A stretch of DNA of 62,499 bases, counting the filler, from Dugesia japonica (Eukaryota): assembly GCA_001938525.1 (NCBI GenBank). It is 5 parts of 5 records of this genome, joined end to end, with 100 filler letters (N's around TTAATTAATTAA, not from the genome) between each part and the next. Parts side by side here need not be neighbours in the genome. Positions count along the whole stretch, not along the records: positions 21,379 to 30,733 come from MQRL01640909.1; 4 more parts are not named here. One strand, 5' to 3'. Both the position numbers and the translations under genes were made by a program. Shown piece by piece: positions 1,179 to 31,146 of the stretch. Each line of letters opens with the position of its first letter. Positions within the stretch are counted from its first letter, which is position 1. The notes beneath the pieces are model-generated. The model was not told the DNA's origin, ran no database searches, and saw only the letters and a program-made list of their open reading frames with translations.

Positions 1179-2453
1179 CTTTTTATATTAAATAAGCAAC
1201 CAGACTTTTTAAGAAAACTGTTGATTTTAATTTCAATGAACTAAGAAAATTAAATATTGTCGTACACAGATTATAATAAAAAAATACTAATACAAAAAAA
1301 TACAAAATATTAATAAACTAAAAGAGTAAAATGAATAAATCTTAATTAAGTGACTCCTTTGAAATTGAAACATATGTTTAAATATTTTAATATACATTAG
1401 TAAAAAATAGTCAACAAAGATGGTATACAAATTATCTACTAACTTTCACCAGATAACATTTATTTCATTGACTGTATAAATGAAAGTATAAAATGATTAC
1501 TAGATTTCTTTAAAAAATGGTTTTTTTTCTCTAGAAAAAAAGAGAAACATCAGATGAAAATGTATTTATAGAATATTTTTAATGAGAAAATTGTCATTTT
1601 CTAATGAAATTTACAAATCATTAAATAGATTTAAAAGATTTAACAAAAAAAATACAACTTTATTCTCTTTAATTATATTAATTTTAGTTTAATATCATTT
1701 CATTGAGAGTTTTTTTTTAAAAAAAAAATATTTAATGCATGTAAATCAGATCGTGTTTTTACATTAATTTCGTCAATAATACTTTGCAATTCGAATGCAA
1801 ACAATTGTTACTATTTTCAATGACTATTGTATAGCACATTTTATTTTAAACTCATATAATTTATATTCATATATTATGTAGTTTTATCGATTGATTTAGT
1901 TGAATTTTTAGAAGAGCACGTTTGGAATTTTTATATTTATAGACTACTATTAGTCATAAATAAATTTTGTTACTATATAAACCGAGTTTGCCCAAATGAA
2001 TAATAAAACGATAAAATTTTTATTTTACTAGATTTCCGAAAAATTAATTACACAGTTCAATTTAACTAAATTTAATTTAATTCGAAAATAATTAATAGAA
2101 AATAAAATTAATAAAAAAAATTAATATAAAAATTAACGAAATTTTTAGTGAATGTTTTTTATTAATTTATTTGTTTAAGGGATTGCGTAATTGGTTGCAT
2201 AATCAGAATTTCCATAAATAAGAATATTTAAATTGATTACAGAATTATACCTTATGTTGACAGATATTTAGTTGAAATATGTTGTAGTAATAAAATATAT
2301 TTTGAAATGACGTTTAAAACTATTTTTTTAAAGAACATTTTAATGAGAGAAATACCGTAAAATAGATGAATGATTCGATTGTTTGTTTATAAATATGTAT
2401 TTATGTGATATTGAGAAAAATATCTTGGTTTTATTTTTCACATGATATCCAAA

Positions 2454-2455
<2 letters not shown>

Positions 2456-2488
<33 letters not shown>
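2456..2488. repeat. (TA)n microsatellite
   Basis: Direct reading. Confidence 0.95.
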
Positions 2489-2492
<4 letters not shown>

Positions 2493-2817
2493 AGATTTGA
2501 GAAGTAAACATATAGAATCCACTAAGCACTCAATAGAAAACCGACGGATACAATTAGATTTCATGGAAAATTTTATGCAATTTAATCATCAATCTTTAAG
2601 CTATTACAAAATACAAATATTTACAGGAAATTTTGATATTTATTGATTTCCTTTGTATAATTCATAATTTTATTTCTCATATTTTATATTAGTAAAAGAA
2701 AATGGTGATTATATGATGTTTTCTCATTGTAATCAAATAATAAAAAATTATATTTTAATATTTTATTTGGATTAAATACAAAAAAAGAAATGAGCAATAA
2801 TTATGTATATGGTTTAA

Positions 2818-3036
2818 CCCTTATCCGGTCAGGTTCTTTAAGCTACGTAAAAGATTCGCGTGTGTGCAACAGACACAATGTAGAACTTTTCCGTACAAAT
2901 TGCGCATGCGTGTCGGTGAATTTGTGTGTGGATGAATGGGGGAGGTAAAGAAAATAATGAATTAATTAATTACCTCTAAATGAACATTTGCATGTATTTG
3001 AATGTATCCAACGGACACACCTTAGTCGGATAAGGA
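2818..3036. mobile_element. piggyBac-type MITE
   Basis: TTAA at 2814-2817 and 3037-3040. Ends cccttatccggtcagg / ccttagtcggataagga are inverted. Confidence 0.8.
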
Positions 3037-3679
3037 TTAATATGATATTTTAAATTAATATTATGTGTTGTTATATTAACATAGTCGTATTAAAATTTTA
3101 AAAGAATTGATTTCCTAAAAATAATTCGTTTAACTGTGAACTTTCTTTGTGTAAGAAAATATTTTGAATATTAAAGAATAATCAAGACTTAGTTAATTAT
3201 TCAACTATTCTAATTTTAGTTTTTGTAAAAGGCTATTTCTTTCTTAACATAAATAAAATCTTAAATAAATAAATTGTTTTAATTTAAAAATTTAATTTAA
3301 TTATAAACCTGCATTATATATATACACATTACTCACATGTGTAATTCACTAACACGTTACGGCCAATAAAATCGAGGTAATTTTTATTTATTTATAAAAT
3401 TAATAAAAAATCTATTTGGGAGATTTCTTTTTTGAATTACACAACCATCTAATATAAAGAGGTTTCTTCATGATATGTTATAATAACAATACCACGAACT
3501 CCATTAAATTCAGAATATTTTTATGAGTACCGATAATATATTGGGTGGTAAGTTATAGTACCGTACTAAAATATATAGACGTTATCGCTGAAATAATCAC
3601 TATTACCTCCAAGAATATAACGGAATGGTATACTTCTAAAGAAGAGGAAATTTTTCGAGTGAAACTTATTACTCTTTTG

Positions 3680-4065
3680 CGTAAAGTGGTGTTGTGCATT
3701 TGGTGGTGAAAAAGGTGTCGTCTACTACGAATTTCTTCCAAGAAATATAGTCATCACTGCCAAAATCAACTATTGACAAGTTAGTTGCCTTGGAGCTAAA
3801 ACTAAAAGAAAAAACCGGAAAGAAATTTGCAGCAAGTTATTACTCCTACTCACATTGCTAGCATCATAGTTTCTTGGTTGGGTAGTTATTCCACATTTGC
3901 CTTACTTTGCAGATCTTGCTCCATCAGATTTTCATCTCTAGTTAATAATATTCAAGAAATCCTCATTGATGACAGAGTTACACTTCAAAATTGGCTTGAT
4001 AACTTCTTTACTTCCAAACCAAAGGATTTATTTCATTAATCATTTGGTTTAATTGGTATTCATTA
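3680..4065 (+). mobile_element. Decayed mariner transposase fragment, interrupted by the hAT element at 4066
   Basis: LCIWW and (S)xDLAPSDFHL motifs and a WLDNFFTSKPKDLF C-terminal segment, with frameshifts. Confidence 0.75.
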
Positions 4066-5686
4066 TAGGATTGGCAAACCAGTTAAAACCGATTTTCTGG
4101 AAAATTAACCGGGAATTTTTTAAACTGCATTTAAAACGATTTAACATAAATTTTACAAAAGAAGACAAACCACTAATTCTCAATTCTATAATTTTTATAG
4201 GAAATTCTAATGTAATAAATAAGAACTAGTATTGTTTGCAAAATAAGCATACTTTTGAATAAGATCAGTAGGATATAACATTTAAAAAGATTTTTCATTA
4301 TTTTTCATTGTTATTTTGTTATAATAATATTACCTGTTTTACAAGAATTCAAGGTAATTTAATATTGAAAATTAAAACGTTCATTTTTATTAAAAATTTT
4401 AATATATATTCCGTTAGATAAATCATCAAAAGAGTTTCACTTGGAAACCTTTCACAAAAAATTAAAATGAAAAAGCAAATTGCAATATTTGTAATTATTT
4501 ATCATCCAACAATTTTTAAAGCTCATTGATTGCATGAAACAAACACTGAATGATTTACAAAAATTAAATATGCTCGAAGATGTTTCTGAAATAATGCTTA
4601 AAAATATTTGTGATGCTTTGTACAATTAATCACAATTTGTATAATTTGTCCCTTGTGAAATTAGTAGTGGAAGCTCTGGTACAATAGGACGCTACTCTAA
4701 TGGCCGAAACCATAATCATATTTATGTTGAATAAAATTGATTAGCTAAATACGGAAATAGGCAAAAGTTTATTCAATTCATTAAAATAAGAGGGTGCTTA
4801 CACATAAAAATATTAATTTAGCATTTTTGGAAAGATCCAAATTCAAATTCCAAATCACTTACTCAACCAGGAGTTTCTCTGCATTATTCTTCAAAAACGG
4901 AAATGTTAAATTTGAACAAGCGGTCATTAAAAAGATTGTTTCAATAAGNNNNNNNNNNNNNNNNNNNNNNNNNNNNNNNNNNNNNNNNNNNNNNNNNNAT
5001 CATATTTAAGTTGAATAAAATTGATTAGCTAAATACGGAAATAGGCAAAAGTTTATTCAATTTATTAAAATAAGAGGGTGCTTACACATAAAAATATTAA
5101 TTTAGCATTTTTGGAAAGATCCAAACTCAAAATCCAAATCACTCACTCAACCAGGAGTTCTCTGCATTATTCTTCAAAAACGGAAATGTTAAATTTGAAC
5201 AAGCGGTCATTAAAAAGATTGTTTCAATAAGAATCAGATCAGAAAGTTTGTTGAATGGTGAAAATAGTGAGATTAACATAACAAATGTGAATAATGATTT
5301 TGAAATGTCGCTTAATGATGAACTTAACATGGCTATAAAAATAGTGTACGCAAAAATCACAAGAATTCGTTATTGTTAACACGTTTACACGAAATTTAAT
5401 TTTTTCGAAGCCACTCATGGAAGAACAAACAACTTAGAATTGCTTTTCAATGTCTTACTTACAGTAAAACAAACTTCAACGGACTCAGAAAGAAGTATTT
5501 CTGTATCAGGAAATTTTTGCAATAAAATTAGAAGTCGTTTTGGTGATGAGTCGATAAATACTCTATTTAATCGCGTTTTTTAGCAAAGTAATACAATAAG
5601 TGAGATTTTATTATAGATTTAATTTGTTTCTTTAAAAACCCGGTTATAACCGGTTTTACAAGAAAGACGGTTTTTTGCAAACCCTA
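4066..5686 (+). mobile_element. Internally deleted hAT DNA transposon
   Basis: Perfect 8-bp TSD ATTCATTA (4058-4065, 5687-5694). TIR taggattggcaaa / tttgcaaacccta. Dimerization-domain remnant LLTVKQTSTDSERSISVSGNFCNKIRSRF near 5450-5545. Confidence 0.9.
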
Positions 5687-7279
5687 ATTCATTATTAGAT
5701 TAAACTTGCTTACAATAATTTCTTATTAAATAAAAAGTTTTAAGTTTCTCTAATCCCTGAAAAATTAATTATTATTTAAATTATTCACCCATTTCATTTT
5801 AATTAAATTACTCAAAAATTCATGTTAGCACACTTAATTTTTTTACATTATATTTTGTAAATGGTTTAGAATTCACTGAATTTCATTGTCAAATTATTAC
5901 TAGTTTATTTCAAATAAAAATTATTTATTTATTAATAAACAGTCCCATCAATCATCAATTTTACAGTATTTCTGACTGTAATAGATTTCATCCACTCGTA
6001 TTATTTACTATAGAACCATTTTAAATATAGCTAGTATATTTATTTCTCAAAACTGTACATTTTCTACAAATGAATTGCAGACAAGAATAATTATTTAGGT
6101 TTTTAAACATTAACATTGAAAAACCATTATTTCTTCGACTTTACTGAATTTATTTAGTAAATTATTAAAATTAAAATATTAATTCATTTTTTATTTTAAA
6201 CTTTTCTTTTAATGCTATTGTCGGGGATTACACAACACTTGAGCTCTGTTCAAGTTGAATGCAACTATATATCTGACTGAGTTCAATAAGATTCGTCTCT
6301 GTGAATTGACTTATTTAATTTCAATAAATAAATATTACTCTAATTTAGATTGAATCAAAACTCTTCCTTTAATAATCAAAATATATTTGAATTGAAATCA
6401 CAAAATATTTTTCTTTACAATTTTCACAAAACCATAAAATTTTAATTCTTCGGCAAATCTGCAAAATATACATAAAACTGAGCTCGTTTATAAAGTGCTC
6501 AAAATACACACATGCACGTTGTCTTTTACAAAATTTTCATTACTTTTTACATCAACGAATGGTGCTTTAAGCACACCTTGATATGACTTTTACAAATATT
6601 CACCAATAAAATAACTAATCAAATAAAATTCAAGAATGATTTTCCAATCAAATGATTTGGTCACACCGAAATCCCTTTGGCCGCATATCAACCTTTTAAA
6701 GAAGGTTGGGGAACGAATCCCTTTAAATTTTAAAATATTTCATATTTCTCTCAAAATTATTAGCAATCTCTATATTTCTCATGTGTAAAATATTTTATAT
6801 TCAAATTAATTATTTTGTTTAAATTTAATTATTCAAAGTTTTGATAATGTGTTTTTAACCATCTTCTCATCTACAAAAATAATTTCGTATTTATTACGAT
6901 GATTTGTGGTGCTTAGACTTTATTTTAAATTATGTATTTATATTTATAGTCAAATTATGTTCTCTTATAAATACACCCTTATTTTCATGAATCAATTGTT
7001 TGTTTCATTATTCATATTGATTTGTATTTTTACATAATTTATTTTTGCAATTTTATTTACTTTATTATATAGATTTAAATTTTACCATTTTATGTTTTAA
7101 TTTATTTTGAGATTTTGGAATTTCAAATTCATATTTTATTTTCTTTTCTCAACTATTACACTATATATACATATATTATTTTAAAAATCCATAAAATCAT
7201 TAAATCACTTAGTTTAAAAAAAATCTCAAAAATCAGTAAATTTAAACAAAAAAAATTAATACAATAAAACAAAAAATTT

Positions 7280-8613: not shown

Positions 8614-8789
8614 TAAAATTTATAATAAATAGCTTAATTAAGGTTTCCTTAGTCACTAAATACTTAATTAAAATACTTACTGTCAAAATAATTAAATTAA
8701 ACTATTCTTAATGTACAGGAGAACAATTACACTTTGATGTGGATTATATGGACGTCTTAATTCACGCGAAACAATTATTATTAACAATC

Positions 8790-9868
8790 GATTATGGTAC
8801 AAAATTTAAATGATTCCCGGGAAACGAGAATATTTCACAGTTATTCCCCGGAATCTCGAGTAAACCGAAAATAAAATTTGCAAATAAAAAAATCAAATAA
8901 AATAATCATTTTTTTAAAATTAAAACAAAGAACTTAATTACTAATATAACAGAAAAAGTTTTAATGAGTTCTGAGACAAACTAGCGCATGAACTAAAATG
9001 TCGTTGAGTCGTGTCCTAATTTCAGGAACAAAAAGGCCAGCAGTCGAAAATATCCTAACATTTTCCACTGAGGTTAGATTAAAACAAAAATAAAAAACCA
9101 TTTTCAATTTGTTTGATAAATTTCCACTAGCCTCAAATAAATTAAATTCTTTAAATATAGTCGTATATTCTTTATCTTCAGAACTTTGTTTTTATTGTGC
9201 TCATATTTATAGCACTTTCGAGCTTTTGTTTTAAAATATTTGTTAGTATTTCTGCTTCAATTTTATCTTACGTATCGGAAATCAATATGCTATATTTATT
9301 TTCAAGTTCAACAGTGTCTTCAGTAATATTAACTGGAAATATGTGGTGTTATAATTCTTTAGAAAATTTAATCATTTCAGATTTCAACGACATTTAAAAA
9401 AAATTATCATATTGTTTAGAATACAATAAATTTTAATTATTTAGTTACTTTACCAATGAAATTAAAATTTTTCCAATCGAGTTATCATGCGTAATTTAAA
9501 ATGTTTTAGTAATTCTCGAGATATTGAATCATCTAAAGTATTTAACGTTTCTTACACAAATGACATAATCTCTCACCTTTTATTAAAATCTATATCACTT
9601 CGACATTATGCTTTGGACGCTAATTTTACTGGAGGTAAACAATCAATTAATACTCTTACTATTTGAACAAGTGATCTTCGTTTTCAAGAAGATGTGAAGC
9701 ACTAATTTCAGATAGACTTTTTTTAATCGGAATTTCAATTTGCTCAAATGTTTCCAACATATCTACCAAGCTATTTCTTATATGAGGACAAGTCTTTATA
9801 ATTATCCCGGGAATTGACTTCTGTTTCCCTGGTAATCGAGAACGAGAAATCCAGGTAGAGAAACCGTA
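8790..9868 (-). mobile_element. Decayed hAT transposon derivative
   Basis: cccgggaa/cgagaa subterminal motifs at both ends. Minus strand reads TSVE..RIFSTAGLFVPEIRTRLND (hAT dimerization motif) at about 9000-9075. Boundaries approximate. Confidence 0.7.
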
Positions 9869-19788: not shown

Positions 19789-21440
19789 AAGTGAAAAAAC
19801 ACAAAACCATCCGAACACTTTCAACACAAAAGTAATATTTCATCAGAACAACATCACATAAGATGGAAAACCCTAGGATCTGGCAACANTTCTACACTTC
19901 GTTGGAAAAAACATGAAGAATTACAAATTAAAGAAGATAATCCTAAAATCAATAATCAATCAATTAAGGAATAATTAACCAATTAGAATTCAGTATAATA
20001 AATTAATTCATAATAATATTTCCATTATTAAAAAAAATCATTGAATAAATCAAAAAAGTAAATTCCTAACAAAAACAAATTCGAAAATTAGAATTATTAT
20101 CATAAACAAAAAACAAATTTGATCGAAGCTTTTATTTTAATGAATTCTGAAAAACGATCAATGCTTAATTCCAACAATTATTTTTGTAATAATTGCAATT
20201 GTAAAAAGTTTTTCTTCAAAGAAATTCAGTTATTTTTAATTTATAGATCAATCGTTTGAATTACAGATTATGCCACGAACGTTTGAGATACCCTAATAAA
20301 ATAATAAAATATTTATGATTTCTTGTTACAATATTCATTTTGTTTCTTAGCAAACCATTCTATTTTAACTTATGAAAAGATAATTGGCAAATACCGTTTA
20401 CTTCAAAAAGTAGTAATTTCGATACCATTCTCTATTTTTTCGAAATACTGCTTGGTTAAAAAGTATAATAACTTTCTTTAAAAAAAGATAAACCTTTTGG
20501 GTTACACTTCTCGTCATTTAATTTTTCGATATTTTTATTATATTATTGTTAAAATACTAGACAAATAAATCAATTTAATAAATTTTGATATATTTGTTTT
20601 AATGAAATATTAATTTTCATTTATGTTTACTAAACAATTGAACATTAAAATTCATTTCAAATACTAAATTTCTATGAGATATGCAAATTGAATTGGGATG
20701 ATTAACTGGTTAAACTGTAATTACTCAGTTTTTTTTAATGTAATTCAAGGATAATCACTGGATAAATTATCATATAAATCATCAAATAGTTCTTGACAAA
20801 ATAAATTATAACAATTTTATTTCTATTAATGATTATATTTTATTAAAATTTTCAGATGAAAACAAAACTATTTTCAAAAATCATTTCTTTAAAATTCGAT
20901 TTCAATTATTTTATTTTGAGTTTTTGTAAATTGTTTTATAAATATTGAAATAATAATAAATTATTTTAAAAATATTAAATCACTAAAATTAAGCTCACAA
21001 CATTTAGATATTTCATGTTTTTAATATTTTCATTTTAATCTAATATTAATAATAAAATAAAAATTTAATAAATATTAAAAATTTAATAAATATTAATAAA
21101 AATTTAGACTACTTCTTATGTTGATACAAATTTTTTATTATTTTGCCAAGAGAAATATTAAAATGTAACAATTCAATAAATAAAATAAAAGCACAAAAAT
21201 TGACAAATCGTACTTGAATTATGCATCATGTTGTTCGCCTTATTTCTTTCATTTAATAACAGAAGATCACCCTGAAATNNNNNNNNNNNNNNNNNNNNNN
21301 NNNNNNNNNNNNNNNNNNNNNNTTAATTAATTAANNNNNNNNNNNNNNNNNNNNNNNNNNNNNNNNNNNNNNNNNNNNAGATTGCACAATTGAAATTATT
21401 CAATAATTTAAACTTTATAAAAAGTTTGTTTTAATATTCT

Positions 21441-21490
21441 TTAATAGCTTGATGATGACGTTTATTCCGTCGAAATTGATCGCAAATTAA
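21441..21490 (+). ncRNA. Degenerate minimal hammerhead ribozyme motif (second Penelope-like family)
   Basis: taatagc-TTGATGA-T-GACG-tttattc-CGTC-GAAA-ttga-TC-gcaaatta. Stem II and GAAA are intact, the first core C is T, and stem I is imperfect. Confidence 0.5.
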
Positions 21491-23282
21491 TATTTTAAAA
21501 AATGGTGTTCAATTATTTATTGTTATAAGTTGATAAATTATTATAAATTATTCTTCTAAATTAATTCTAAAATGAAAATCTATTGCTAACGTTTTTTATA
21601 CTTTTTCAACTGGATTAATCAAATTATTGGCAGATGTATCAAGGTCATTATTTATTTTATTCCTAAACATTTAAAGAACAGTTAAAAATTTGTCGACCAA
21701 AATAGAAAATTTGACAGGAAACGTTTTGCTGAATTTGGTTCAAAGAATGTAACAAATCTATATGAATTGATTCCTATAAAAGAACCTAAAAGATTTCACT
21801 GATATCGCAAGCAACTTCTTTGACAAACTCAAAAAAAGCACGCAGATATTCAAGAAATAAAAACGATAAAACTGTTTTACAGTTGACATGTATTATCTTG
21901 GAGCAGTAATGCTAATTTCAAGCAGAAAATCGGTAAAAATGAATGATGAAAGAATTAAAGCTGTATGAATGTCTTCAAATGAAGAAATGAAATTGATTTA
22001 AATGATTTTAAGAAATATATTCAATAAAAAATTTTATAGACAAGAAGATTAAAATATATTATTAATAAATCATGTGTTTTAATCAATTTACTTTTAATCA
22101 TGATTCATTATTTTCACGCGGACAAATTATGGACAAGAAAATTACTTTTTTAAATGCTTTTAAATATTTTAGAAGAATCGGTAAAATTTTTTTAAATTAC
22201 AATTGTAAAATTTTCAATTTCTGTTAGTAATAAATAGCTTAATGAAATATCAATAATGCCAGATTTATTTAAAATGGATTTTAAAAAAACCAATTTAATT
22301 GAAAATATTTTTAGCTGATTAATCTTTTATATCAAATGAAAATATAGCTTCACATTAAATAGTTTTTCCTTAATAACATTTTAGTGCCAATTTTTATTGA
22401 ATATTATATATTTCAATTTTCTTCAAAGGTAAATACTAATAATATTAGTTTTAGATTTATATTTTTAAAAATTTGAAAAATGAATTAATTAAATATTTAT
22501 CCTATTATAAAGACAAAAGCATATTTTTCTTTCAATTTTAAAGAACAATGATTATCAATGAAGATATTCAATGTAGAATCTGCATTTCATCAAAATTTAC
22601 AAATAAATGTTTTTTACCTCCTAATAAGTTAAGTTTTCAGAATATATTAAGTAGTTGAAAATGTATTGAGCCTTTTTCCCGCTTGTGGACTAAGTGTCNC
22701 GTATCTCGCGTATTATAATTCACAATACGTTATATGGTGATTACTGATTTGTATGAAAATTTATGGTTAGATGAAAACTAAAAAGTAAAATAGAACTCGT
22801 ATCCTAAAATGCTTCCTTCCGATCGAAAAATGGGAACAAAGAAGATTGATATATTGAAGACAGAGTGAAGTAGAAACATGATCTCACGCCAAATTTGTTT
22901 TTGAAAGACGCTGAATTACATGACGGGTAAATTGATAGATGAGACAATTTCAGGTGACATTATTATAAAAGTTATTAAACAAAGAAACGTTCAAAGTAAG
23001 ATATAGCCGCTATTTTTTAATTTTTATTCTTGTACAATTTAATAAAGAAATAAAACTACCCATACATTATATTAATCAATAGTATCCAAAAATTGTTTGT
23101 TTCGATACAATTTAGTCAGCAAAAATTAAATGTATAACACAGAAACTTTTTTTATTTTTATTTAAATTCCAGATGTTTTTTACATAAGGAAATAAAGAAA
23201 AACAATTTAAAAACTAAAATTAATTTAATAACAATAACTAAAACTATTTTAAAAACTCTAATATGAGTTCCTTCATAAGCGT

Positions 23283-23546
23283 TTATGAACACGAATCGTC
23301 ACCATTTTCGGTTGCTGAATATAACTTGTTATCAAAAAAGAATAATCCATCCTCAATATCAAAGTATTTCGTTCTTAAAACATAGTTCCAATAATCATCT
23401 TGTCCGAATCGTTTTGATTTACTTTCTAATTTTGGATACATGTCATTTATTATTTTTATTGCAAGATCTAAAAATAAATTAAAACAATATTAATGAAAAC
23501 ATTATTTACCATGTTCACTTATTTCTTCTCCATTTTTTAAAAGCAT
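23283..23546 (-). CDS. Small two-exon orphan gene (73 aa) inside the Maverick arms
   Basis: Exons 23546-23510 and 23467-23283 with a 42-bp GTAAAT...TTTTAG intron. The spliced frame is open from ATG to TAA: MLLKNGEEISEHDLAIKIINDMYPKLESKSKRFGQDDYWNYVLRTKYFDIEDGLFFFDNKLYSATENGDDSCS. TATATAAA at 23587-23580. Confidence 0.6.
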
Positions 23547-25347
23547 TTTAAAATCGTATTTTAACGGAAAATAAATTACTTTATATACAAATTTAATGTA
23601 ACACTACCTGACCAATTAAATTCAACAAATCAACAGTTAGAAATGCTTTGTTTAACTTGAAGTGGCTTGTATTGCACTTATAATGTTTAACCAAGGAAAT
23701 ACCAATCAAAACATGCTAATAATCAAAAGTAACACATTTTGAATTAATAAAATCAATACATAGAAACTATACTTAGTATAAAAGCAACAACATTTAATAA
23801 ATTTTCATTATTTAAATATGCAAATTAATTTAAATATGCAAATTAGGTAGATACGTAAGCACTGGAACACTTGAATTTGTCTGGTCCGGGGGGGGGGTTC
23901 TTGTTCTTTAATATTTTGTTGTTCAATTTTTGTTCTTACAAATTTTTGCTCTTCAATTTTTTTGTGGTTCAATTTTTTGTAGTTCAGATTTTTTGTGGTT
24001 CAAATTTTTGTACTTCAAAGTTTTGGGTGAATTGGTTCAATATTTCCTCAGGGTTGGTAACTTTTAGGTAATTTAGATAAAATTGGTTGAAAATTTCCTC
24101 GATTCGGGTAATTTTTGGGTGATTTAGAAGAAATTAGTTTAAATTTTTCTCGGAGAGGTTAAATTAACAAAAAATAGGACCATCTCTGTGGATTACGGAA
24201 TGCCTACGGAATTTCATGGAATCCAAAAGAAATTCCTGAACAGATCAATACTATATATGTTTCAAGTAATTAAATACAAGTACTTTTTATTTATTTTGTT
24301 ATTTAATATTTTCATTTAGGAACCTGTGAAGATACAACGATCTACTTATAGTTCGCTGATATCCAATATTGGTTCCAAAGACATGAATACTTTGAATTTA
24401 TTATTTTAAAGAATTGAACCAACGATTACAATAAAGGATACAGTTTTCATCAATTACAATGATTCAAAAAGGACTGTTTTCGAAAAGTCCCAAAAATATA
24501 TGATCCAGGTGGAAATACAAGGATTCAAGAAAAATGGATACAACATTAACTCAATTAATATAAAAGTTAATTCTCCAATTTTAAAAATCCGAGACATTTT
24601 ATAAATGTTGTTATTATAATAAATGTTATTTATTTATTTATTTGTCTTTTAACTAATTCTATTTAAATCGTAATATTTAAAAAGATTTACTTATCAAATT
24701 AACTAAATAAAAATCTTATCTCTAAATTATAACTATAAAAATATTCATAAACTTTATTTCAAATAATGAAAAACTGTATGTCAAATAAATTACTTAAAAA
24801 CTCTATTAAATAAGAAAAACTTTACGATAAATATATAACAAAGTAACCAAATAAAATAAACAAGAATCAATTTTAATAACAAAACTTTATTTATTGAAAT
24901 GAATTAGCTTCTCAAGGAGCATATATGTACATATGTAACACTCTCAATGGAACGTAGATATAGCTCCTTATAATATCTAATACTTTTTCATAGTCTTCTT
25001 TTTTCAGGACCATTTTCTTTCTCAATAGAAATATCGCAATAATATCTGAAAATAAAAATGATAAATTATGAATATTTAAAAAATTTAATATTACCCTTTT
25101 CATTAATCAGATCCTAATGGCCATCTGATTCTGCTGATTCATTATATGTTTTTCGAACCTCCTCTATTTGAATATGATACATTTATTTTTAGAATTACCA
25201 CTAATTAAAATTAAAAACGTAATGTGTTATATATAGAATTCTCTGTTTAACACAAATCGACTAATGAAAAACAAGTAATTATCAAACAAGTAAATGCCTT
25301 GTTATAATTGCATTCATATTTCATAACTGTGTATTTATGTTGTAAAA

Positions 25348-25791
25348 TTAAACAATTAAATTATATAAATCGAAAATTATATTATCTATATATCCTTGAT
25401 AGTGTAAATTCTTTATATCAAGTATTAAAATGTTTTCTGATGAAAATACGTTTACACATACAGGATCATACTTTGTAAGTCGTATTGCGGAATAGAATTC
25501 TGGTTCAAACCAACACTTTGTTATTTTTGCTAATTTAAACAAATTAATAACTTGTCCTAAGTTGATTACAATTGTTAATGATTGCCAACAAATATGTTCA
25601 ATATTATACTGTAACTTTTCCATTTTCAACGGTCTTTTACATCCCATTATTTGAGCATTTCCTGATTTAAAGAATATCAATGTATGTTTCTTACTTTTGT
25701 CAACAAATTTAGAAGGTTTACCGATAGGAAACTTCATTTTGCCGGATACATCATGCAATACTTTACCTTTGTAATTAATATTAACTAACAT
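25348..25791 (-). CDS. Element-encoded, intronless TBP-like (TATA-binding protein fold) protein, 147 aa
   Basis: Two TBP half-repeat signatures. TLIFFKSGNAQIMGCK corresponds to TALIFSSGKMVCTGAK. QSLTIVINLGQVINLFKLAK..CWFEPEFYSAIRLTKYDPVCVNVFSSENILIL corresponds to QNMVGSCDVKFPIRLEGL..SYEPELFPGLIYRM..P.IVLLIFVSGKVVLTG. Intact ORF. Confidence 0.85.
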   Translation of the reverse strand: MLVNINYKGKVLHDVSGKMKFPIGKPSKFVDKSKKHTLIFFKSGNAQIMGCKRPLKMEKLQYNIEHICWQSLTIVINLGQVINLFKLAKITKCWFEPEFYSAIRLTKYDPVCVNVFSSENILILDIKNLHYQGYIDNIIFDLYNLIV

Positions 25792-25900
25792 TATTAATGA
25801 TTATTATTAAATGTGAGTGTATATATATGTATTTTAAAGAAATATAATTAATTGATTCATTTAAATCAAGACAAATAAACAATGCATTAAACTTAATATT

Positions 25901-26530
25901 TACAAAATAGAGTTAAAAAATGATGCTGTTTATCAAATTGTAGGTCCAAGCGGTAGTGGAAAAACATTGTTCTTATGCAAGTTACTAAAATTAAATTGAT
26001 TTAAATCAAAGTTTAACAAAATATATTGGCACAGAAATGCAGATGAAGCACACGGGCTGACACAATCAGAATTTTGCAACATAAAAATGAAAATTATATA
26101 TGGATTTGATAATAATTGGAGCAAGAGATTGAAACCGGGAGATGTTATTGTAGTAGATGATCTGTATCAGGAGGCTAATAAAGAAAAAGACTTTAATAAT
26201 TTATTCACAAAAATAAGCAGACATTGTAATGTGACTGTGATACTCATTACACATAATTTATTCCATCAAGTAGGAAGTCATAGAACACGCAATTTAAATG
26301 TACAATACTTGGTTCTATTTATAAATTCAAGCGATCAAACAGTTGTCAATTTTCTAGCAAGACAGGCATATCCTAATAATATACAATTTCTTATTGAATC
26401 ATTTCAAGATGCAACAATAAATCCTCATGGTTATATTTTTCTCGACTTTACACAACAATGTCCAGACAAANTGAGGATGAGAACCAATATTTTNAATAAT
26501 GGTAAGGTAAACGAACAAAAAGCGTATTGA
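25901..26530 (+). pseudogene. Maverick/Polinton DNA-packaging ATPase (A32/FtsK-HerA-like) with one in-frame stop
   Basis: Walker A GPSGSGKT at 25943 is in frame with ORF 26087-26530, separated by TGA at 25997. Walker B VIVVDD, then FTKISRH.N.TVILITHNLF, RT.NLN.QY.VLF, LARQ.YP, F.DAT..PHGYIFLD and R.RTNI, all typical of Maverick ATPases. Confidence 0.92.
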
Positions 26531-26659
26531 AAAAAGAAAAAGGGTGAAAAGAGGAAACAAAGTAAACAATTGAACATTTTTAACTTTTGAAATTCTATGG
26601 TAGGAAAATATCGAACGTAAACGGAAAATTGAAGTTATATAAACAAATACGGGTAAGTT

Positions 26660-26977
26660 ATATTGAAATATAAAAATTACAACGAAGCATTCCATTTTAT
26701 ACATCATTAATTAAATCTCCAAAATTGGTGAGACTGCAAATTTTGAAATCATTTCCAACGTTTGTTATGGATGATTTAATTGAAACTATTACAAATATTG
26801 TTCGCGGAAATGTAAATGTGAGCAACGCTAGAAAGGAAGTATTGAAGAAACAATAAAAAAACATTATTACCACTTGTAAATACAAAAAATAGGAAATTGA
26901 TTAGGCGATTAATACGAGATAATCAAGGAGGTAGCTTTTTAGTAGCATTACTACCAATTGCATTAGCAGCATTATAA
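26660..26977 (+). pseudogene. Maverick conserved small basic protein ending in QGGxFL-hydrophobic tail (putative protease-processed core/membrane-active protein)
   Basis: LIETITNIVRGNVNVSNARKEVLKKQ*...RKLIRRLIRDNQGGSFLVALLPIALAAL*. Matches the E...N...GN.......K..L...K...QxGGFL..LL pattern of the gene usually found after the Maverick ATPase. Has a stop and a frameshift. Confidence 0.7.
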
Positions 26978-27109
26978 TTAACTCATTTCAAATAAACAAT
27001 GTTTGCTTTTATATCAACAGTACTAATATAAACTCATTCCAAATAAAAAATTGGTGATTTAAAATCATTACCTAATTTTGATTTCAAATTTTCATCTAAT
27101 TGTTGTAAT

Positions 27110-27275
27110 GGGTAAGCTGAAGAAAATATAAGCGGACCGAGAAAATCCCGCAGGTTTTCGTGGCGTAGAAAAATTGATGAAACCAGGACATAAAACGAAA
27201 TCAAAAACCATAAATTGTTATGGGGTCAACCAGCGTACAGTTTGAATAAAAAGTATGTTGAAAAGATTTCCAACA
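27110..27275 (+). pseudogene. N-terminus of Maverick retroviral-like integrase, truncated
   Basis: D.ENPAGFRGVEKL...LWGQPAYSLNKK...KRF, compared with the recalled Maverick integrase start YYDPxxPxSFGGVxKL...WLxxQxxYTLHKP..KRF. Frameshifted; catalytic core not visible. Confidence 0.7.
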
Positions 27276-30200
27276 AGAGCGTACATTCATTGTTAAGCTT
27301 GCATCACAAATGCATTATTAGCAAAGAAGAATTCAGGTGCAANNNNNNNNNNNNNNNNNNNNNNNNNNNNNNNNNNNNNNNNNNNNNNNNNNNNNNNNNN
27401 NNNNNNNNNNNNNNNNNNNNNNNNNNNNNNNNNNNNNNNNNNNNNNNNNNNNNNNNNNNNNNNNNNNNNNNNNTTTCCTTTTATTATTAATAATAATGAA
27501 TTTAGATTCAATTATAGACGGCTTTAAAGAAATGGTTAAAATTAATTATTCAGACAAAAATCGAGAAATACTAGTACCAAGTAATCAAAGTAATAATTAC
27601 TTGCGTAAGTGTAATATTTGTTACATAAAATATAAAATACAAGATTTATTAAACAAATTTATTAACTAATATTTATTAACTAACATTTAAACATCAAATT
27701 TCATTTTAGTCATTCGATATTTTGTGATACTTTTAATATTTTGTATTTTCTAAATATTTAAATTAAATATTGGTTAATAAAAATAAAAGTATTACCACCA
27801 GTTTTGTTTTTCTTTCAATCTGACATATGTGTGGTTTTCCAAACGCAAATGATAGTGATTGTAATTGTATATCAAGCTTGATTTCGTTTATTTGTTAAGG
27901 ACATTTATATTGTAAGTCAGAATTTAAACCATTTGCAACTTTTACTTTATCTTTTCCAACTAGCTGGTTTGCTAGAGTTGGCGGATAAATATTGTACAAT
28001 TTTACCAAATTAAGCATTAGGAAACTTATGTTTTTTAATGAATCCATTTTGAAATCTAGTTTTTTGACGCTTTCATCTTTTCTTAACAATACCAAACTAT
28101 TTAAAAAGTGAATTTACATTAATGCGTGTAAACCAGTATCTAGTATATTCTCCAACCGATGTCAATAGAGTAATATATCATTATTCTAAATTTCTGCAAA
28201 TGCATCCATGAACAAATCGAGATTGTAAACATTCTTCAGAGTTTCTGCTTTGTTGGCTTTACAATCGCTTAAGAAATCTATATGATTCAAGCTTATGTAT
28301 TTGTTTATCGCATTTGCATTTAATGATGAAAGAATTTTCGGGATTTTGGATTGAGTCATTTCTTTCTTAAATTATTCTTCAATCTCTTCATTTTCACGAG
28401 AACAAATATCGATATTTTTAATCATTTCTTCTTGTTTTAGTTATAATGCATTTATTTTGGTCACATTTTAAAAATAATAATTTATTTCGAAAACCATGAA
28501 TTTATATACATTTCGGTGTGTACCCATGAATGCATGTAATAATAATAATTTGATCTGACTGGTTAATAATTAAAATAATTTTGATTGAGTGTTAAAACCT
28601 ATTTATTCAAAATATAATTTAACTAAAATCATTTATTTTTAAAATGTGATACAAAATAATTGAAAAATTAATAGATGTTAAAAACGTTATTCAAAATGAA
28701 GCAGTTGAGCCAAATTTAGAAAATTATGAAAAAGAATGGCCTACAATAGCAGATGAGGAGAAAAATACTTTGAAGCAACGAGTAATAAATTTTTTAATAA
28801 TTTAATATTTTAAAATGAATGATTTAGAAAATTTTGAATCTGATGTACAAATAATCGAAGAACTAGAGTTGACGAAAAAAATATTCAAATACAAAAAAAA
28901 GTTTGATTTAATTTAATTTTAATTATATTATTTTGTTTTAGATTTGTTCATAGAATTACTTGGACTGCTTTATCAATGCCTTGGAGATGATATACTTTAT
29001 TGTGCACCAGAATTGATTTAGTACAAAATAAAACAGATGACCGGAGTTGATATCAAAAAGGGTATGAACATATTCAACGAATATCATAAAGAAGATATTT
29101 ATTGTGAATACTGTTCTCGAAAGATGAAAGATTTGAAGAAAAAAATTAATGAGTCTAATAAAAGACAATNNNNNNNNNNNNNNNNNNNNNNNNNNNGTTT
29201 GTTATTAAATAAATGTTAATTTAAACTTTATTAGTTTATTAAAAATACTTTAAATAAAAAAAATTTCTGTGTTATACTTTTTATTTTTGCTGATTAAATT
29301 GTATCGAAACAAACAACTTTTTGACATTAGTCGTTATTGTAATGTGTATTTACTTTTTAATTATTTATAAAATAATACAAGAATCCAATTTAAAAATTAA
29401 AAAATAGTGGATGTATCTTACTTTTAAAATTTCTTTGTTCAGAAACTTTTTATGACGATTTCACCTGAGATTTTTTCATGTAATTGCGCGTCTTTCCAAA
29501 TCAAATTCAGCGCGATATCATGTTTCTACTTGACTCTGTCTTCAAAAAACTAAATTCCTTTGTTCCGATTTTTCAACCGAAAGGAAGCATTTTAAGATAC
29601 GAGATTATGATATATTCCTATCTTACTTTTTAATTTTACGTCTAACCATAAATTTTCATCTAAATCGGTAATTACCAGTTCTGACCTGGAGCTTTTTTCA
29701 ATAAAAGTAGTTTAGGCAATGTATAGGTAGTTTTTAGTTTTAGGAAGAATGGCATAATTTCGAGATGATATCTTTCAAAATGGTGGTGGTTCCGATTTTA
29801 AATCTTTAATAACTTTTTAAGGATGTACCAAACATGCATTACATTCACTTTGCGCGTCTAATGATACCAAATTTGGTTTGATCTCATAAGAATTACGGGC
29901 AATACGATCGAAAAACTTCAAAATTTTTGAAAATTCTCTATCCAATGTTATTCATGACCTTGAATGACCTACGAAAATAAATATTTTTTCGATGACCTTA
30001 AAAAAATCGAAAAAAAATCGAACGGAAATTTTTTTTATCTTACCACCACTCCGGGTGGGTCACTGAGGCTGGTTGAATGCTGACATGTACCACTATTTAT
30101 GGGATTTAGAAATTCACCCAATATAAGTTAAAATAAAAATAATTTCTTTTAATCAATAGGAATAATATTAGTAATATTTCCATTCCATTTTGTATCATAT

Positions 30201-31146
30201 TTCTGATTGCCAAAAGAGTAGTTATAGAGAAAATACTATAGATATTTTTAACTATCAAAACTTAATTAAAACAAAGATCTTTGATTAATTAAACAGCATT
30301 TCATTTATTTGTAGAAAAATGATAAATTTAAGTTTTTCAGCAAATAAATGAGTTTATGTCATGCTTTGTATTTTATCTTCAATTCATCATGAATTTTAGA
30401 TTGAAAAAACAAAACCAGTAAGATTTATAATTAATTCTGCCAAAGTAGAATTTTTCTTTGATTGAATGACAATTCAGCTATAAATTGAAATTGTCAAAAT
30501 AATTTATGTTTATTTTTTTGTATATTCTCTTTATAATTTACTATAATTGATTTTTCTTATCCCGAAATTTGAATCTTTCTATGTAATTTTCATTCAAATT
30601 TGCTCTAATTGTGAAATATAGATTTTATTAAAAACAAATTTTTAAGAAAAATGTTAACAAATTATTATTATTTATAATAATAATAATGATAATAATAATA
30701 ATAATAATAATTATTATTATAATAATAATTATANNNNNNNNNNNNNNNNNNNNNNNNNNNNNNNNNNNNNNNNNNNNTTAATTAATTAANNNNNNNNNNN
30801 NNNNNNNNNNNNNNNNNNNNNNNNNNNNNNNNNAATTACAATTATTTTAGAAGAATAAATGTGTAAAATACCGCAAAAAGTATAAAGGATATTTAAATGT
30901 TAAATGGTTTCTTACAAAATTATGATTGTTTAACGTATAATATTTTTCTAAAGCTAATATCTAACAAAAATGAGTTGATTAGCTACTATTGTATAGGGTA
31001 TCATGACAAAATCCCCCTGGACAATATTCCTCATATTGAATGCTCTTCTCGATTTTGCACTTGGTTTCGTTTCTTCCCCGTTTTCTGTTAATTCGTTTAA
31101 TCTTCTGCTAATCTTTATGCTTGATTTTATAGAGAAGCAGGTTTAA

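What the first reader, a model, noticed from the sequence alone, without database searches (positions are those of the whole stretch)
25348..27275. Maverick/Polinton gene block with its own TATA-binding-protein-like gene
Seen: an intact, intronless 147-aa ORF with both TBP half-repeat signatures lies head-to-head, about 110 bp away, from a run of packaging ATPase, QGGxFL protein and integrase N-terminus, all within Maverick-type ends. Established: those three genes are Maverick core genes. TBP is not among the canonical Maverick genes (pPolB, integrase, ATPase, adenoviral-type protease, major and minor capsid), although some large DNA viruses encode TBP-like factors. Inference: this lineage captured a host TBP long ago, trimmed it (no N-terminal tail, shortened first repeat) and uses it to drive its own promoters or compete with host TFIID. 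I know of no description of this, but could not search. The TBP frame is open while its neighbours carry stops, although SENILILD in place of SGKVVITG may be decay.
Basis: partly seen in the sequence, partly recalled or inferred. Interest (0 to 1): 0.92.

Follow-up and report, generated by a model that had tools for sequence, protein, structure and literature searches.

The report
Maverick element's own mini TATA-binding protein
The 147-codon reading frame is a true but shortened relative of the TATA-binding protein; it belongs to a widespread, almost undescribed gene family carried by one lineage of Maverick/Polinton virus-like elements, and the copy in this window is a decaying relic inside a gutted element.

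Summary
ORF 25348-25791 (-) is open and 147 aa long. By family profile and by predicted structure it is a TATA-binding-protein (TBP) fold with a complete second repeat and a shortened first repeat. It lies about 115 bp head-to-head from a packaging ATPase, followed by a QGG-motif gene and the first ~60 codons of an integrase. All of this sits between inverted repeats of at least 420 bp.

The gene is not a one-off capture. At least 133 protein clusters (50% identity) of about 150 aa form a family set well apart from cellular TBPs. Every related contig with enough flank carries Maverick genes beside it: ATPase, rve/chromo integrase, adenoviral-type protease, a double jelly-roll capsid protein and a protein-primed polymerase. 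Intact copies evolve under purifying selection (dN/dS about 0.1).

These elements also share a TATA-like 7-mer, TATAAAC, 32-42 nt upstream of many genes. That fits a self-encoded promoter-recognition factor but does not prove one.

The window's copy is decaying. It departs at 5 of 21 highly conserved columns and has 21 private changes against 3-9 in its relatives. Its neighbours are broken, and the element lacks polymerase, capsid and protease genes. The open frame is not significant (P about 0.13).

Prior art is one figure label ("TBP") in Starrett et al. 2021.

The parts
22735..29677 (.). The whole element as bounded by the inverted repeats, about 6.9 kb. It is a deletion derivative of a Maverick/Polinton-type element with no polymerase, capsid or protease gene detectable. 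An assembly gap lies inside it.
   Evidence: Inverted repeat pairs I1-I4 and their alignment. tblastn with the proteins of seven related loci finds only the TBP-like gene, the ATPase, the QGG gene and the integrase N-terminus.
22735..23157 (+). Left terminal inverted repeat arm. The alignment suggests it runs on to about 23235.
   Evidence: about 84% complementary to the right arm, with a few indels.
29252..29677 (-). Right terminal inverted repeat arm. Its inner end runs into the N run at 29170-29196.
23810..24152 (.). Tandem repeat arrays (periods 15-18, 31 and 51 nt) in the left inner part of the element.
24143..24598 (.). Remnants similar to two small ORFs (65 and 82 aa) that lie beyond the 3' end of the TBP-like gene in the related contig L002.
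   Evidence: tblastn, E 5e-7 and 5e-8.
25348..25791 (-). TBP-like gene, 147 codons plus stop, frame open. It has a shortened first repeat and a complete second repeat. This copy departs from the family at 5 of 21 highly conserved columns.
25792..25906 (.). Divergent intergenic region between the TBP-like and ATPase genes. It holds a block conserved with L001, L002 and L004 that contains the ATPase-side TATA-like motif, which is one mismatch off TATAAAC in this copy.
   Evidence: Alignment; motif searches.
25907..26530 (+). Packaging ATPase (A32/FtsK-like), broken by 1 in-frame stop. It stays in one frame, contains two single-N codons, and is 80% identical to the intact 210-aa protein of L001.
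   Evidence: Pfam Pox_A32 at 30.4 bits in the L008 homologue.
26638..26644 (+). Exact TATAAAC motif, 33 nt before the start of homology of the QGG-motif gene.
   Evidence: It is one of only two exact matches in the whole 30.8-kb window. The spacing matches the 32-42 nt mode seen in relatives.
26674..26932 (+). QGG-motif small protein gene (homologue of the L001 106-aa protein), broken by at least 1 frameshift and 1 stop.
27027..27033 (+). Second exact TATAAAC motif, upstream of the integrase remnant.
27108..27284 (+). Integrase N-terminus, only about the first 59 codons, with 2 in-frame stops. The catalytic rve core and the chromodomain seen in relatives were not found.
   Evidence: relatives have rve plus Chromo.
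27343..27473 (.). Run of 131 N (assembly gap or mask). It was left as it is, and what it hides is unknown.

Best explanation
The ORF is a decaying copy of a gene that belongs to the normal gene set of one lineage of Maverick/Polinton (adintovirus-like) elements. The gene encodes a minimal TBP paralogue of about 150 aa. It has no N-terminal tail, a first repeat cut down to its beta-strands, and a full second repeat. Shown here: the fold, the family, its constant linkage to Maverick core genes, purifying selection on intact copies, and a shared TATA-like 7-mer (TATAAAC) 32-42 nt upstream of many element genes. Inferred: in active elements the protein binds this motif and brings host TFIIB and RNA polymerase II to the element's genes, above all the virion-assembly genes. 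This would work in the manner of the TBP mimics of herpesviruses and the TBP-like factors of giant viruses. In this window the system is dead. The element has lost its polymerase, capsid and protease genes, its ATPase, QGG gene and integrase are broken, and the TBP-like frame is open by chance while it accumulates changes at conserved positions. The confidence given is for the whole statement. The shown parts alone (TBP fold, Maverick-borne family, decaying copy) I put at about 0.85, and the inferred activator mechanism alone at about 0.45.
For: Fold: profile hits in the PDB are TBPs only, best E 3e-22. Pfam TBP matches 46 of 46 members. The AF2 model has pLDDT 93.5, and its Foldseek top 44 PDB hits are all TBP. 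hhalign against canonical TBPs gives probability 98.9, with family residues 29-147 matching the end of repeat 1 plus all of repeat 2. The two halves of the family align to each other at E 1.4e-6.

Family: 133 clusters at E<=1e-3 and 58 at E<=1e-10, mostly 140-180 aa. A score gap separates them from cellular TBPs.

Linkage: L001, L008, L009, L013, L014, L015 and L016, and the short L005 and L007, all carry Maverick genes beside the TBP-like gene. These are a Pox_A32-like ATPase, an rve+Chromo integrase, Peptidase_C5, pPolB PF03175 at 113 bits, and a 412-aa protein whose model (pLDDT 89.6) matches iridovirus, PBCV-1, Sputnik and mavirus major capsid proteins.

Selection: dN/dS is 0.10 between two intact copies, like the ATPase at 0.09-0.11.

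Promoter motif: 37 of 54 TATAAAC occurrences lie in sense within 80 nt upstream of a gene, a 43-fold density excess. They peak at 32-42 nt and are present before 4/4 ATPase, 4/4 QGG and 4/4 capsid genes. The only two exact matches in the window sit upstream of the QGG-motif gene and of the integrase remnant; only the first has the family's typical spacing.

Decay of this copy: 5 of 21 conserved columns are changed, against 0 in its four closest relatives. It has 21 private changes against 3-9. dN/dS roughly doubles on pairs that include it. Its neighbours carry 5 breaks.
Against: No binding, expression or transcription-start data exist, so the link between this protein and the TATAAAC motif is only co-occurrence. 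TATAAAC contains the ordinary TATA box, which host TBP could read unaided. The TBP-like gene itself has the exact motif in only 2 of 8 loci. The first repeat has lost its long helix, so the protein may not form the same DNA saddle or make the same partner contacts as TBP. hhalign did not place the first 28 residues. dS values exceed 1 and are saturated. Part of the window copy's excess of private changes could come from its being the outgroup of the five sequences compared. The host organism is unknown.
Confidence: 0.55

Rival explanations
1. Host TBP reads the element's TATAAAC promoters, and the element's mini-TBP acts as a competitor or decoy. It would occupy host TATA boxes, or soak up TFIIB or other partners, and so damp host transcription or evade host regulators. 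In this view it is not the activator of the element's own genes.
For: The motif contains the canonical TATA box. The protein keeps the complete second repeat but has lost the long helix of the first repeat, so some partner surfaces are gone and others remain.
Against: Nothing here separates it from the activator model. The strong conservation of the strands of the concave face in both halves fits DNA binding under either model. A pure decoy would not need the element to keep a private, tightly spaced promoter motif.
Confidence: 0.2
2. The protein uses the TBP fold for a job other than transcription, for example binding the AT-rich ends or the origin of the linear genome during replication or packaging.
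For: The gene often sits at the end of the morphogenesis block (protease, p170, TBP-like) or beside the packaging ATPase. Foldseek also gives weak matches to a rolling-circle replication initiator (RepDE, rank 45-46, TM 0.44-0.47).
Against: Sequence-level homology is to true TBPs only, at E down to 3e-22, and the conserved repeat-2 motifs are kept. The replication-initiator matches are far weaker. The gene-proximal TATA-like motif gives a ready transcriptional target.
Confidence: 0.1
3. The ORF in this window is a recent host-TBP retrocopy, or a chance open frame that only looks like TBP and lies next to Maverick debris by accident.
For: Taken alone, the window's protein falls just under Pfam's TBP threshold (22.4 against 22.9 bits) and finds no PDB chain.
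Against: It has close homologues at 61-68% identity with the same length and the same head-to-head ATPase neighbour. The family profile and the structure are unambiguous. Cellular TBPs score far below family members.
Confidence: 0.02

Closest known systems
Cellular TATA-binding protein (TBP; Pfam PF00352), archaeal and eukaryotic
   Same: The fold is the same and the sequence homology is clear. The second repeat is complete, and the two phenylalanine columns that align with those of TBP repeat 2 are conserved in the family: one invariant, one in at least 90% of members.
   Different: The protein is about 150 aa instead of about 180 for the core. The first repeat is cut to about 60 residues and has no long helix. 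There is no N-terminal tail. The family forms its own cluster with a score gap to all cellular TBPs, and it is encoded inside a mobile virus-like element.
TBP-like proteins of giant viruses (Nucleocytoviricota), e.g. those of Heterosigma akashiwo virus 01 and Terrestrivirus, and the asfarvirus B263R homologue
   Same: These are virus-encoded TBP-fold proteins and are the top matches in the viral structure library (E 6e-8 to 3e-4, TM 0.58-0.75).
   Different: They are larger (190-500 aa) with two full repeats. Those viruses bring their own RNA polymerase, and no polymerase subunit gene was seen in any of the related contigs here, so host polymerase II would have to be used (inference).
Beta/gamma-herpesvirus TBP mimic (KSHV ORF24, EBV BcRF1, HCMV UL87), which reads TATT-type late promoters (PMC7498053, PMC12529657, PMC4893493)
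   Same: It works like what is proposed here: a nuclear DNA virus supplies its own TBP-like factor to steer host RNA polymerase II to a private TATA variant upstream of late, mostly structural, genes. Members appear as weaker fold matches (ranks 21, 25 and 33).
   Different: The herpesvirus proteins are several hundred residues long, carry extra domains and act within a six-protein complex. There is no detectable sequence relation, and fold similarity is low (TM 0.36-0.55). The motif here is TATAAAC, not TATT.
'TBP' gene drawn in maps of midsize eukaryotic linear dsDNA (MELD) viruses with adintovirus-like PolB (Starrett et al. 2021, PMC8502044, Fig. 5 legend; preprint 10.1101/697771)
   Same: It is a TBP-like gene inside a Polinton-related virus genome. 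The legend names TRAF and TBP genes in the same figure, and the related contig L008 carries two TRAF/MATH genes plus the TBP-like gene.
   Different: The paper gives only a label. It offers no family, structure, distribution, selection or promoter analysis. I could not see the figure or the sequences, so identity with this family is not established.

Membership tests
TBP family (Pfam PF00352) | Significant match to the family model | tested here: met
   The window protein alone scores 22.4 bits, E 1.1e-4, just under the 22.9-bit cut-off. All 46 aligned family members match, best E 1.2e-24. The family profile against the PDB finds TBPs only, best E 3e-22.
TBP family (Pfam PF00352) | Two tandem repeats forming the saddle fold | tested here: inconclusive
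   Repeat 2 is complete. Repeat 1 keeps its strands but lacks the long helix and is about 30 residues shorter. The two halves are homologous. Foldseek aligns the model over the whole TBP core at TM 0.64-0.75. The result is a saddle-like model, but not the canonical two full repeats.
TBP family (Pfam PF00352) | Binding and bending of TATA DNA through the concave sheet | not testable with these tools
   There is indirect support only: the phenylalanine columns of repeat 2 and one of repeat 1 are conserved, and a TATA-like motif lies upstream of element genes.
Maverick/Polinton elements | [quoted passage not shown] | tested here: not met
   None was found in the window's element. It is present next to the TBP-like gene in relative L013 (PF03175, 113 bits). 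The window's element is therefore a derivative, not a complete member.
Maverick/Polinton elements | Retrovirus-like (rve) integrase | tested here: inconclusive
   The window holds only about the first 59 codons, with 2 stops and no catalytic core. Relatives have intact rve plus Chromo integrases of 345-357 aa. An N gap follows the remnant.
Maverick/Polinton elements | A32/FtsK-type packaging ATPase | tested here: met
   Window 25907-26530 is 80% identical to an intact 210-aa homologue and carries one stop. Pfam Pox_A32 scores 19.2 bits for the window fragment and 30.4 bits for L008.
Maverick/Polinton elements | Adenoviral-type cysteine protease and double jelly-roll major capsid protein | tested here: not met
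   Both are absent from the window. In relatives, Peptidase_C5 is present, and a 412-aa protein has an AF2 model whose top Foldseek matches are iridovirus, PBCV-1, Sputnik and mavirus capsid proteins at E down to 4e-16.
Maverick/Polinton elements | Long terminal inverted repeats and a short target-site duplication | tested here: inconclusive
Inverted repeats of at least 420 bp are present at about 84% identity. There is no clean duplication, with 3 of 6 flanking bases alike.
Herpesvirus late-gene TBP mimic (ORF24/BcRF1/UL87) | Homology to that protein family | tested here: not met
   There is only a distant fold resemblance (TM 0.36-0.55, ranks 21-33) and no sequence match. It serves as a functional analogy only.

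The most novel reading that the evidence does not exclude
A whole lineage of Maverick/Polinton elements carries a self-contained promoter-recognition system. It would consist of a minimal TBP, stripped of the first-repeat helix, that reads a private TATA variant (TATAAAC) placed 32-42 nt before the start codons of the element's genes. This would let the element command host RNA polymerase II partly outside host control. It would be the smallest known virus-encoded TBP and the first such factor described for this class of elements.
Probability: 0.35. Interest if true: 0.8.

Novelty: new variant of a known kind. Interest (0 to 1): 0.6.

Why it matters
Mavericks/Polintons are thought to replicate in the nucleus and to depend on the host for transcription, and how their genes are switched on is essentially unknown. 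A conserved element-encoded TBP, together with a conserved gene-proximal TATA-like motif, gives a concrete and testable model for their gene expression. It extends the list of viruses that bring their own TBP from giant viruses and herpesviruses down to 15-20 kb elements. It also offers a naturally pared-down TBP of about 150 aa that shows which parts of the fold can be dispensed with.

Tried and rejected
- Single-sequence search of the PDB gave nothing; only the family profile worked.
- A scan of the viral contig collection with the family alignment found no relative.
- P0159, the one mid-scoring hit from NCBI, turned out to be an ordinary archaeal TBP in an archaeal gene neighbourhood, not a bridge to the family.
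- An alternative genetic code as the reason for the neighbours' stops was considered and rejected. The stops are of mixed types, one gene also changes frame, and relatives are open under the standard code.
- No tRNA or Rfam family is present in the piece, so these gave no clue to the host.
- Sample accessions gave one clue only: L003 comes from a canid gut metagenome (PMC11909886). Others come from Tara and sediment metagenomes. The host of the window remains unknown. Nothing suggests human sequence.
- The capsid-like, p170 and post-integrase families had no Pfam or PDB sequence hits. Only the capsid candidate was taken on to structure prediction.
- A tree against host, TRF2 and viral TBPs was not built. 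No eukaryotic host TBP set could be fetched, and about 85 alignable residues would not resolve it.
- Slips, stated as required. While reading the sequence early on, I translated the start of the ATPase by eye and saw where a break lies. Later I considered particular substitutions in the TBP-like copy. I also recalled short motifs of cellular TBP from memory.
Full report
**What is in the window**

The piece (21379-30733) is very AT-rich, with about 25% G+C inside the element and 22-24% in the flanks. ORF 25348-25791 on the minus strand is open for 147 codons. Its start lies about 115 bp head-to-head from a packaging ATPase at 25907-26530. That ATPase is 80% identical to an intact 210-aa homologue and stays in one frame. 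Next come a small QGG-motif gene (26674-26932) and the first ~59 codons of an integrase (27108-27284). A run of 131 N follows (27343-27473); I left it as it is.

The block lies between inverted repeats at 22735-23157 and 29252-29677, about 84% complementary. The alignment suggests the arms extend to roughly 23235 and 29197. I did not find the 'AGTAG' ends at the repeat termini, and there is no clean target-site duplication. No tRNA or Rfam family is present.

**Is the ORF a TBP?**

Taken alone the protein is borderline: Pfam TBP gives 22.4 bits against a 22.9-bit cut-off, and no PDB chain is found. Its relatives settle the question.

- Four proteins of 149-153 aa are 61-68% identical to it.
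- An exhaustive search finds 133 clusters at E<=1e-3, mostly 140-180 aa.
- A 46-member profile hits only TBPs in the PDB, best E 3e-22.
- All 46 members hit Pfam TBP.
- The AlphaFold2 model is confident (pLDDT 93.5), and its top 44 PDB matches are all TBP, with TM 0.64-0.75 over the full core.
- Profile-profile alignment to canonical TBPs (probability 98.9) matches family residues 29-147 to the last strands of repeat 1 plus all of repeat 2, with a gap where the long helix of repeat 1 should be. The model likewise shows no long helix between the two halves.
- The N- and C-terminal halves of the family align to each other (probability 90.5, E 1.4e-6).

**Whose gene is it?**

Family members score at least 100 bits against the profile. 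The best cellular TBPs, mostly archaeal, score at most 83 bits. One mid-scoring NCBI protein proved to be an ordinary archaeal TBP.

Every related contig with enough flank shows Maverick genes beside the TBP-like gene (all-against-all clustering):

| Contig | Genes beside the TBP-like gene |
|---|---|
| L001, L016 | ATPase head-to-head with it, then the QGG protein and an rve/chromo integrase |
| L008, L014 | ATPase, QGG protein, integrase, a post-integrase protein, a 110-aa protein, a 412-aa protein, protease, a ~170-aa protein |
| L009, L015 | the same capsid, protease and p170 block |
| L013 | a protein-primed polymerase (PF03175, 113 bits) |
| L005, L007 (short) | the protease and/or p170 neighbour |

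The 412-aa family is a double jelly-roll major capsid protein. Its model has pLDDT 89.6, and the top matches are iridovirus, PBCV-1, Sputnik and mavirus capsid proteins.

Between two intact copies, dN/dS of the TBP-like gene is 0.10, the same as for the ATPase (0.09-0.11). dS is above 1, so these values are rough. The gene is thus an old, selected part of this Maverick lineage and not a recent host retrocopy. The donor, host or virus, cannot be told. Archaeal, microsporidian and other eukaryotic TBPs score alike, and giant-virus TBP-like proteins match the fold equally well.

**State of the copy in the window**

The element is about 6.9 kb. It has no detectable polymerase, capsid or protease gene. 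Its neighbours are broken:

- the ATPase by 1 stop;
- the QGG gene by at least 1 frameshift and 1 stop;
- the integrase remnant by 2 stops, and it is truncated.

The stops are of mixed types, so a variant genetic code is not the explanation. Five breaks in 358 aligned codons predict about two in 147 codons, so an unbroken frame has a chance of about 0.13. The open frame is not evidence of selection.

The TBP-like copy departs at 5 of the 21 columns that are at least 90% conserved across the other 45 family members, while its four closest relatives depart at none. It has 21 private changes where those four agree, against 3-9 for each of them. Part of that excess could reflect an outgroup position. 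Pairs that include it show about twice the dN/dS (0.18-0.21). I read it as a relic under relaxed constraint.

**A promoter motif that goes with the family**

The conserved block in the divergent intergenic region led me to the 7-mer TATAAAC.

- Across eight related loci it occurs 54 times on both strands.
- 37 of those lie in sense orientation within 80 nt upstream of a called gene, a 43-fold density excess.
- The nearest-motif distances peak at 32-42 nt before the ATG.
- All four ATPase, four QGG and four capsid genes have it. The TBP-like gene has the exact form in 2 of 8 loci and near variants in the others.

In the whole 30.8-kb window there are only two exact matches. Both are inside the element on the coding strand. 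One lies 33 nt before the QGG gene and the other upstream of the integrase remnant. The ATPase-side copy is one mismatch off. The spacing implies very short leaders if the motif acts as a TATA box; that is inference from the usual ~30-nt distance between a TATA box and the transcription start.

**How it most likely works**

Shown: the fold, the family, the linkage to Maverick genes, the selection and the motif.

Inferred: the mini-TBP binds the TATAAAC motif and recruits host TFIIB and RNA polymerase II to the element's genes. This parallels the herpesvirus TBP mimic at TATT late promoters (PMC7498053, PMC12529657, PMC4893493) and the TBP-like factors of giant viruses. Loss of the first-repeat helix may remove surfaces used by host regulators while keeping the second repeat. 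That last point is speculation from general knowledge of TBP complexes.

There are two main rivals. In one, host TBP reads the motif and the mini-TBP is a competitor or decoy. In the other, the fold serves replication or packaging at the AT-rich ends. Nothing in the sequence decides between the activator and competitor models.

**What is known already**

Full-text searches combining Polinton, Maverick or adintovirus with TBP or TATA terms found only Starrett et al. 2021 (PMC8502044; preprint 10.1101/697771). [quoted passage not shown] TRAF is listed in the same figure, and contig L008 also carries two TRAF/MATH genes. The presence of a TBP-like gene in such elements has therefore been noticed once. 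Its family, structure, distribution, selection and promoter motif have not been described in the library I could search.

**Verdict**

The window holds a dead copy of an interesting and nearly undescribed Maverick gene. Its value lies in the family it points to, not in this locus.

Early in my reading I translated part of the ATPase by eye and saw where a break lies. I considered individual substitutions in the TBP-like copy. I also recalled short cellular TBP motifs from memory. I used none of this in tools, notes or this report.

Noticed in passing
L005:301-753, L007:248-811, L008:14631-15089, L009:4291-4827 and 8749-9291, L014:7335-7841, L015:1740-2300, L016:3978-4643: A protein family of about 150-220 aa sits directly beside the TBP-like gene in seven loci, usually in the order protease, this protein, TBP-like. 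It has a conserved acidic N-terminal block and a Cys/His-rich C-terminus, and no Pfam or PDB sequence match. It may be a partner of the TBP-like protein. No remnant of it was found in the window.
   Followed up: partly
L001:1824-2144 (-), with homologues in L008, L014 and L016; window 26674-26932: The small QGG-motif protein ends in a Gly-Gly site followed by a hydrophobic tail. Because these elements carry an adenoviral-type protease, it could be a protease-processed, membrane-active virion protein like adenovirus protein VI. This is an idea from general knowledge and was not tested.
   Followed up: no
L008:854-1858 and 5476-6447; L009:6231-7730: Related elements carry host-like accessory genes: two TRAF/MATH-domain genes in L008 and a leucine-rich-repeat gene in L009. 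L008 also has about 3.6 kb (1859-5475) with no ORF of 90 aa or more.
   Followed up: partly
L013:1780-4794 (-): The protein-primed polymerase next to the TBP-like gene has a weak Endonuclease_7 match (21.3 bits, below the 23.6-bit cut-off) just ahead of the polymerase domain.
   Followed up: no
L001:205-714 (-), L009:1049-2272, L014:4239-5342, L016:2-949 (-): The gene after the integrase encodes a 316-407-aa protein family with a strongly conserved N-terminal motif. It has no Pfam hit and may be the minor capsid (penton) protein, which was not tested. In L008 this family matches two shorter called ORFs (66 and 131 aa).
   Followed up: no
window 23810-24152: Several tandem repeat arrays (periods 15-18, 31 and 51 nt) lie in the element's left inner part, between the left inverted repeat and the small-ORF remnants. 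Their role is unknown.
   Followed up: no
window 27474-29251: About 1.8 kb between the N gap and the right inverted repeat shows no similarity to any gene of the related loci, apart from one weak 19-residue match to a small L002 ORF (E 8e-4). It may be unrelated filler, heavily decayed element sequence, or a nested insertion.
   Followed up: partly
window 22699, 26471, 26494, 29170-29196: There are single-base Ns, two of them inside the ATPase, and a 27-N run at the inner edge of the right inverted repeat. They were left as they are. They limit what can be said about the ATPase frame and the length of the repeat.
   Followed up: no
L003 (SRR13765889); L009 (Tara sample); L016 (sediment metagenome): Family members come from very different sample types: a canid gut metagenome (PMC11909886), Tara and sediment metagenomes. 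G+C ranges from 26% to 44% across the loci. The lineage therefore probably has several hosts, and none could be named.
   Followed up: partly
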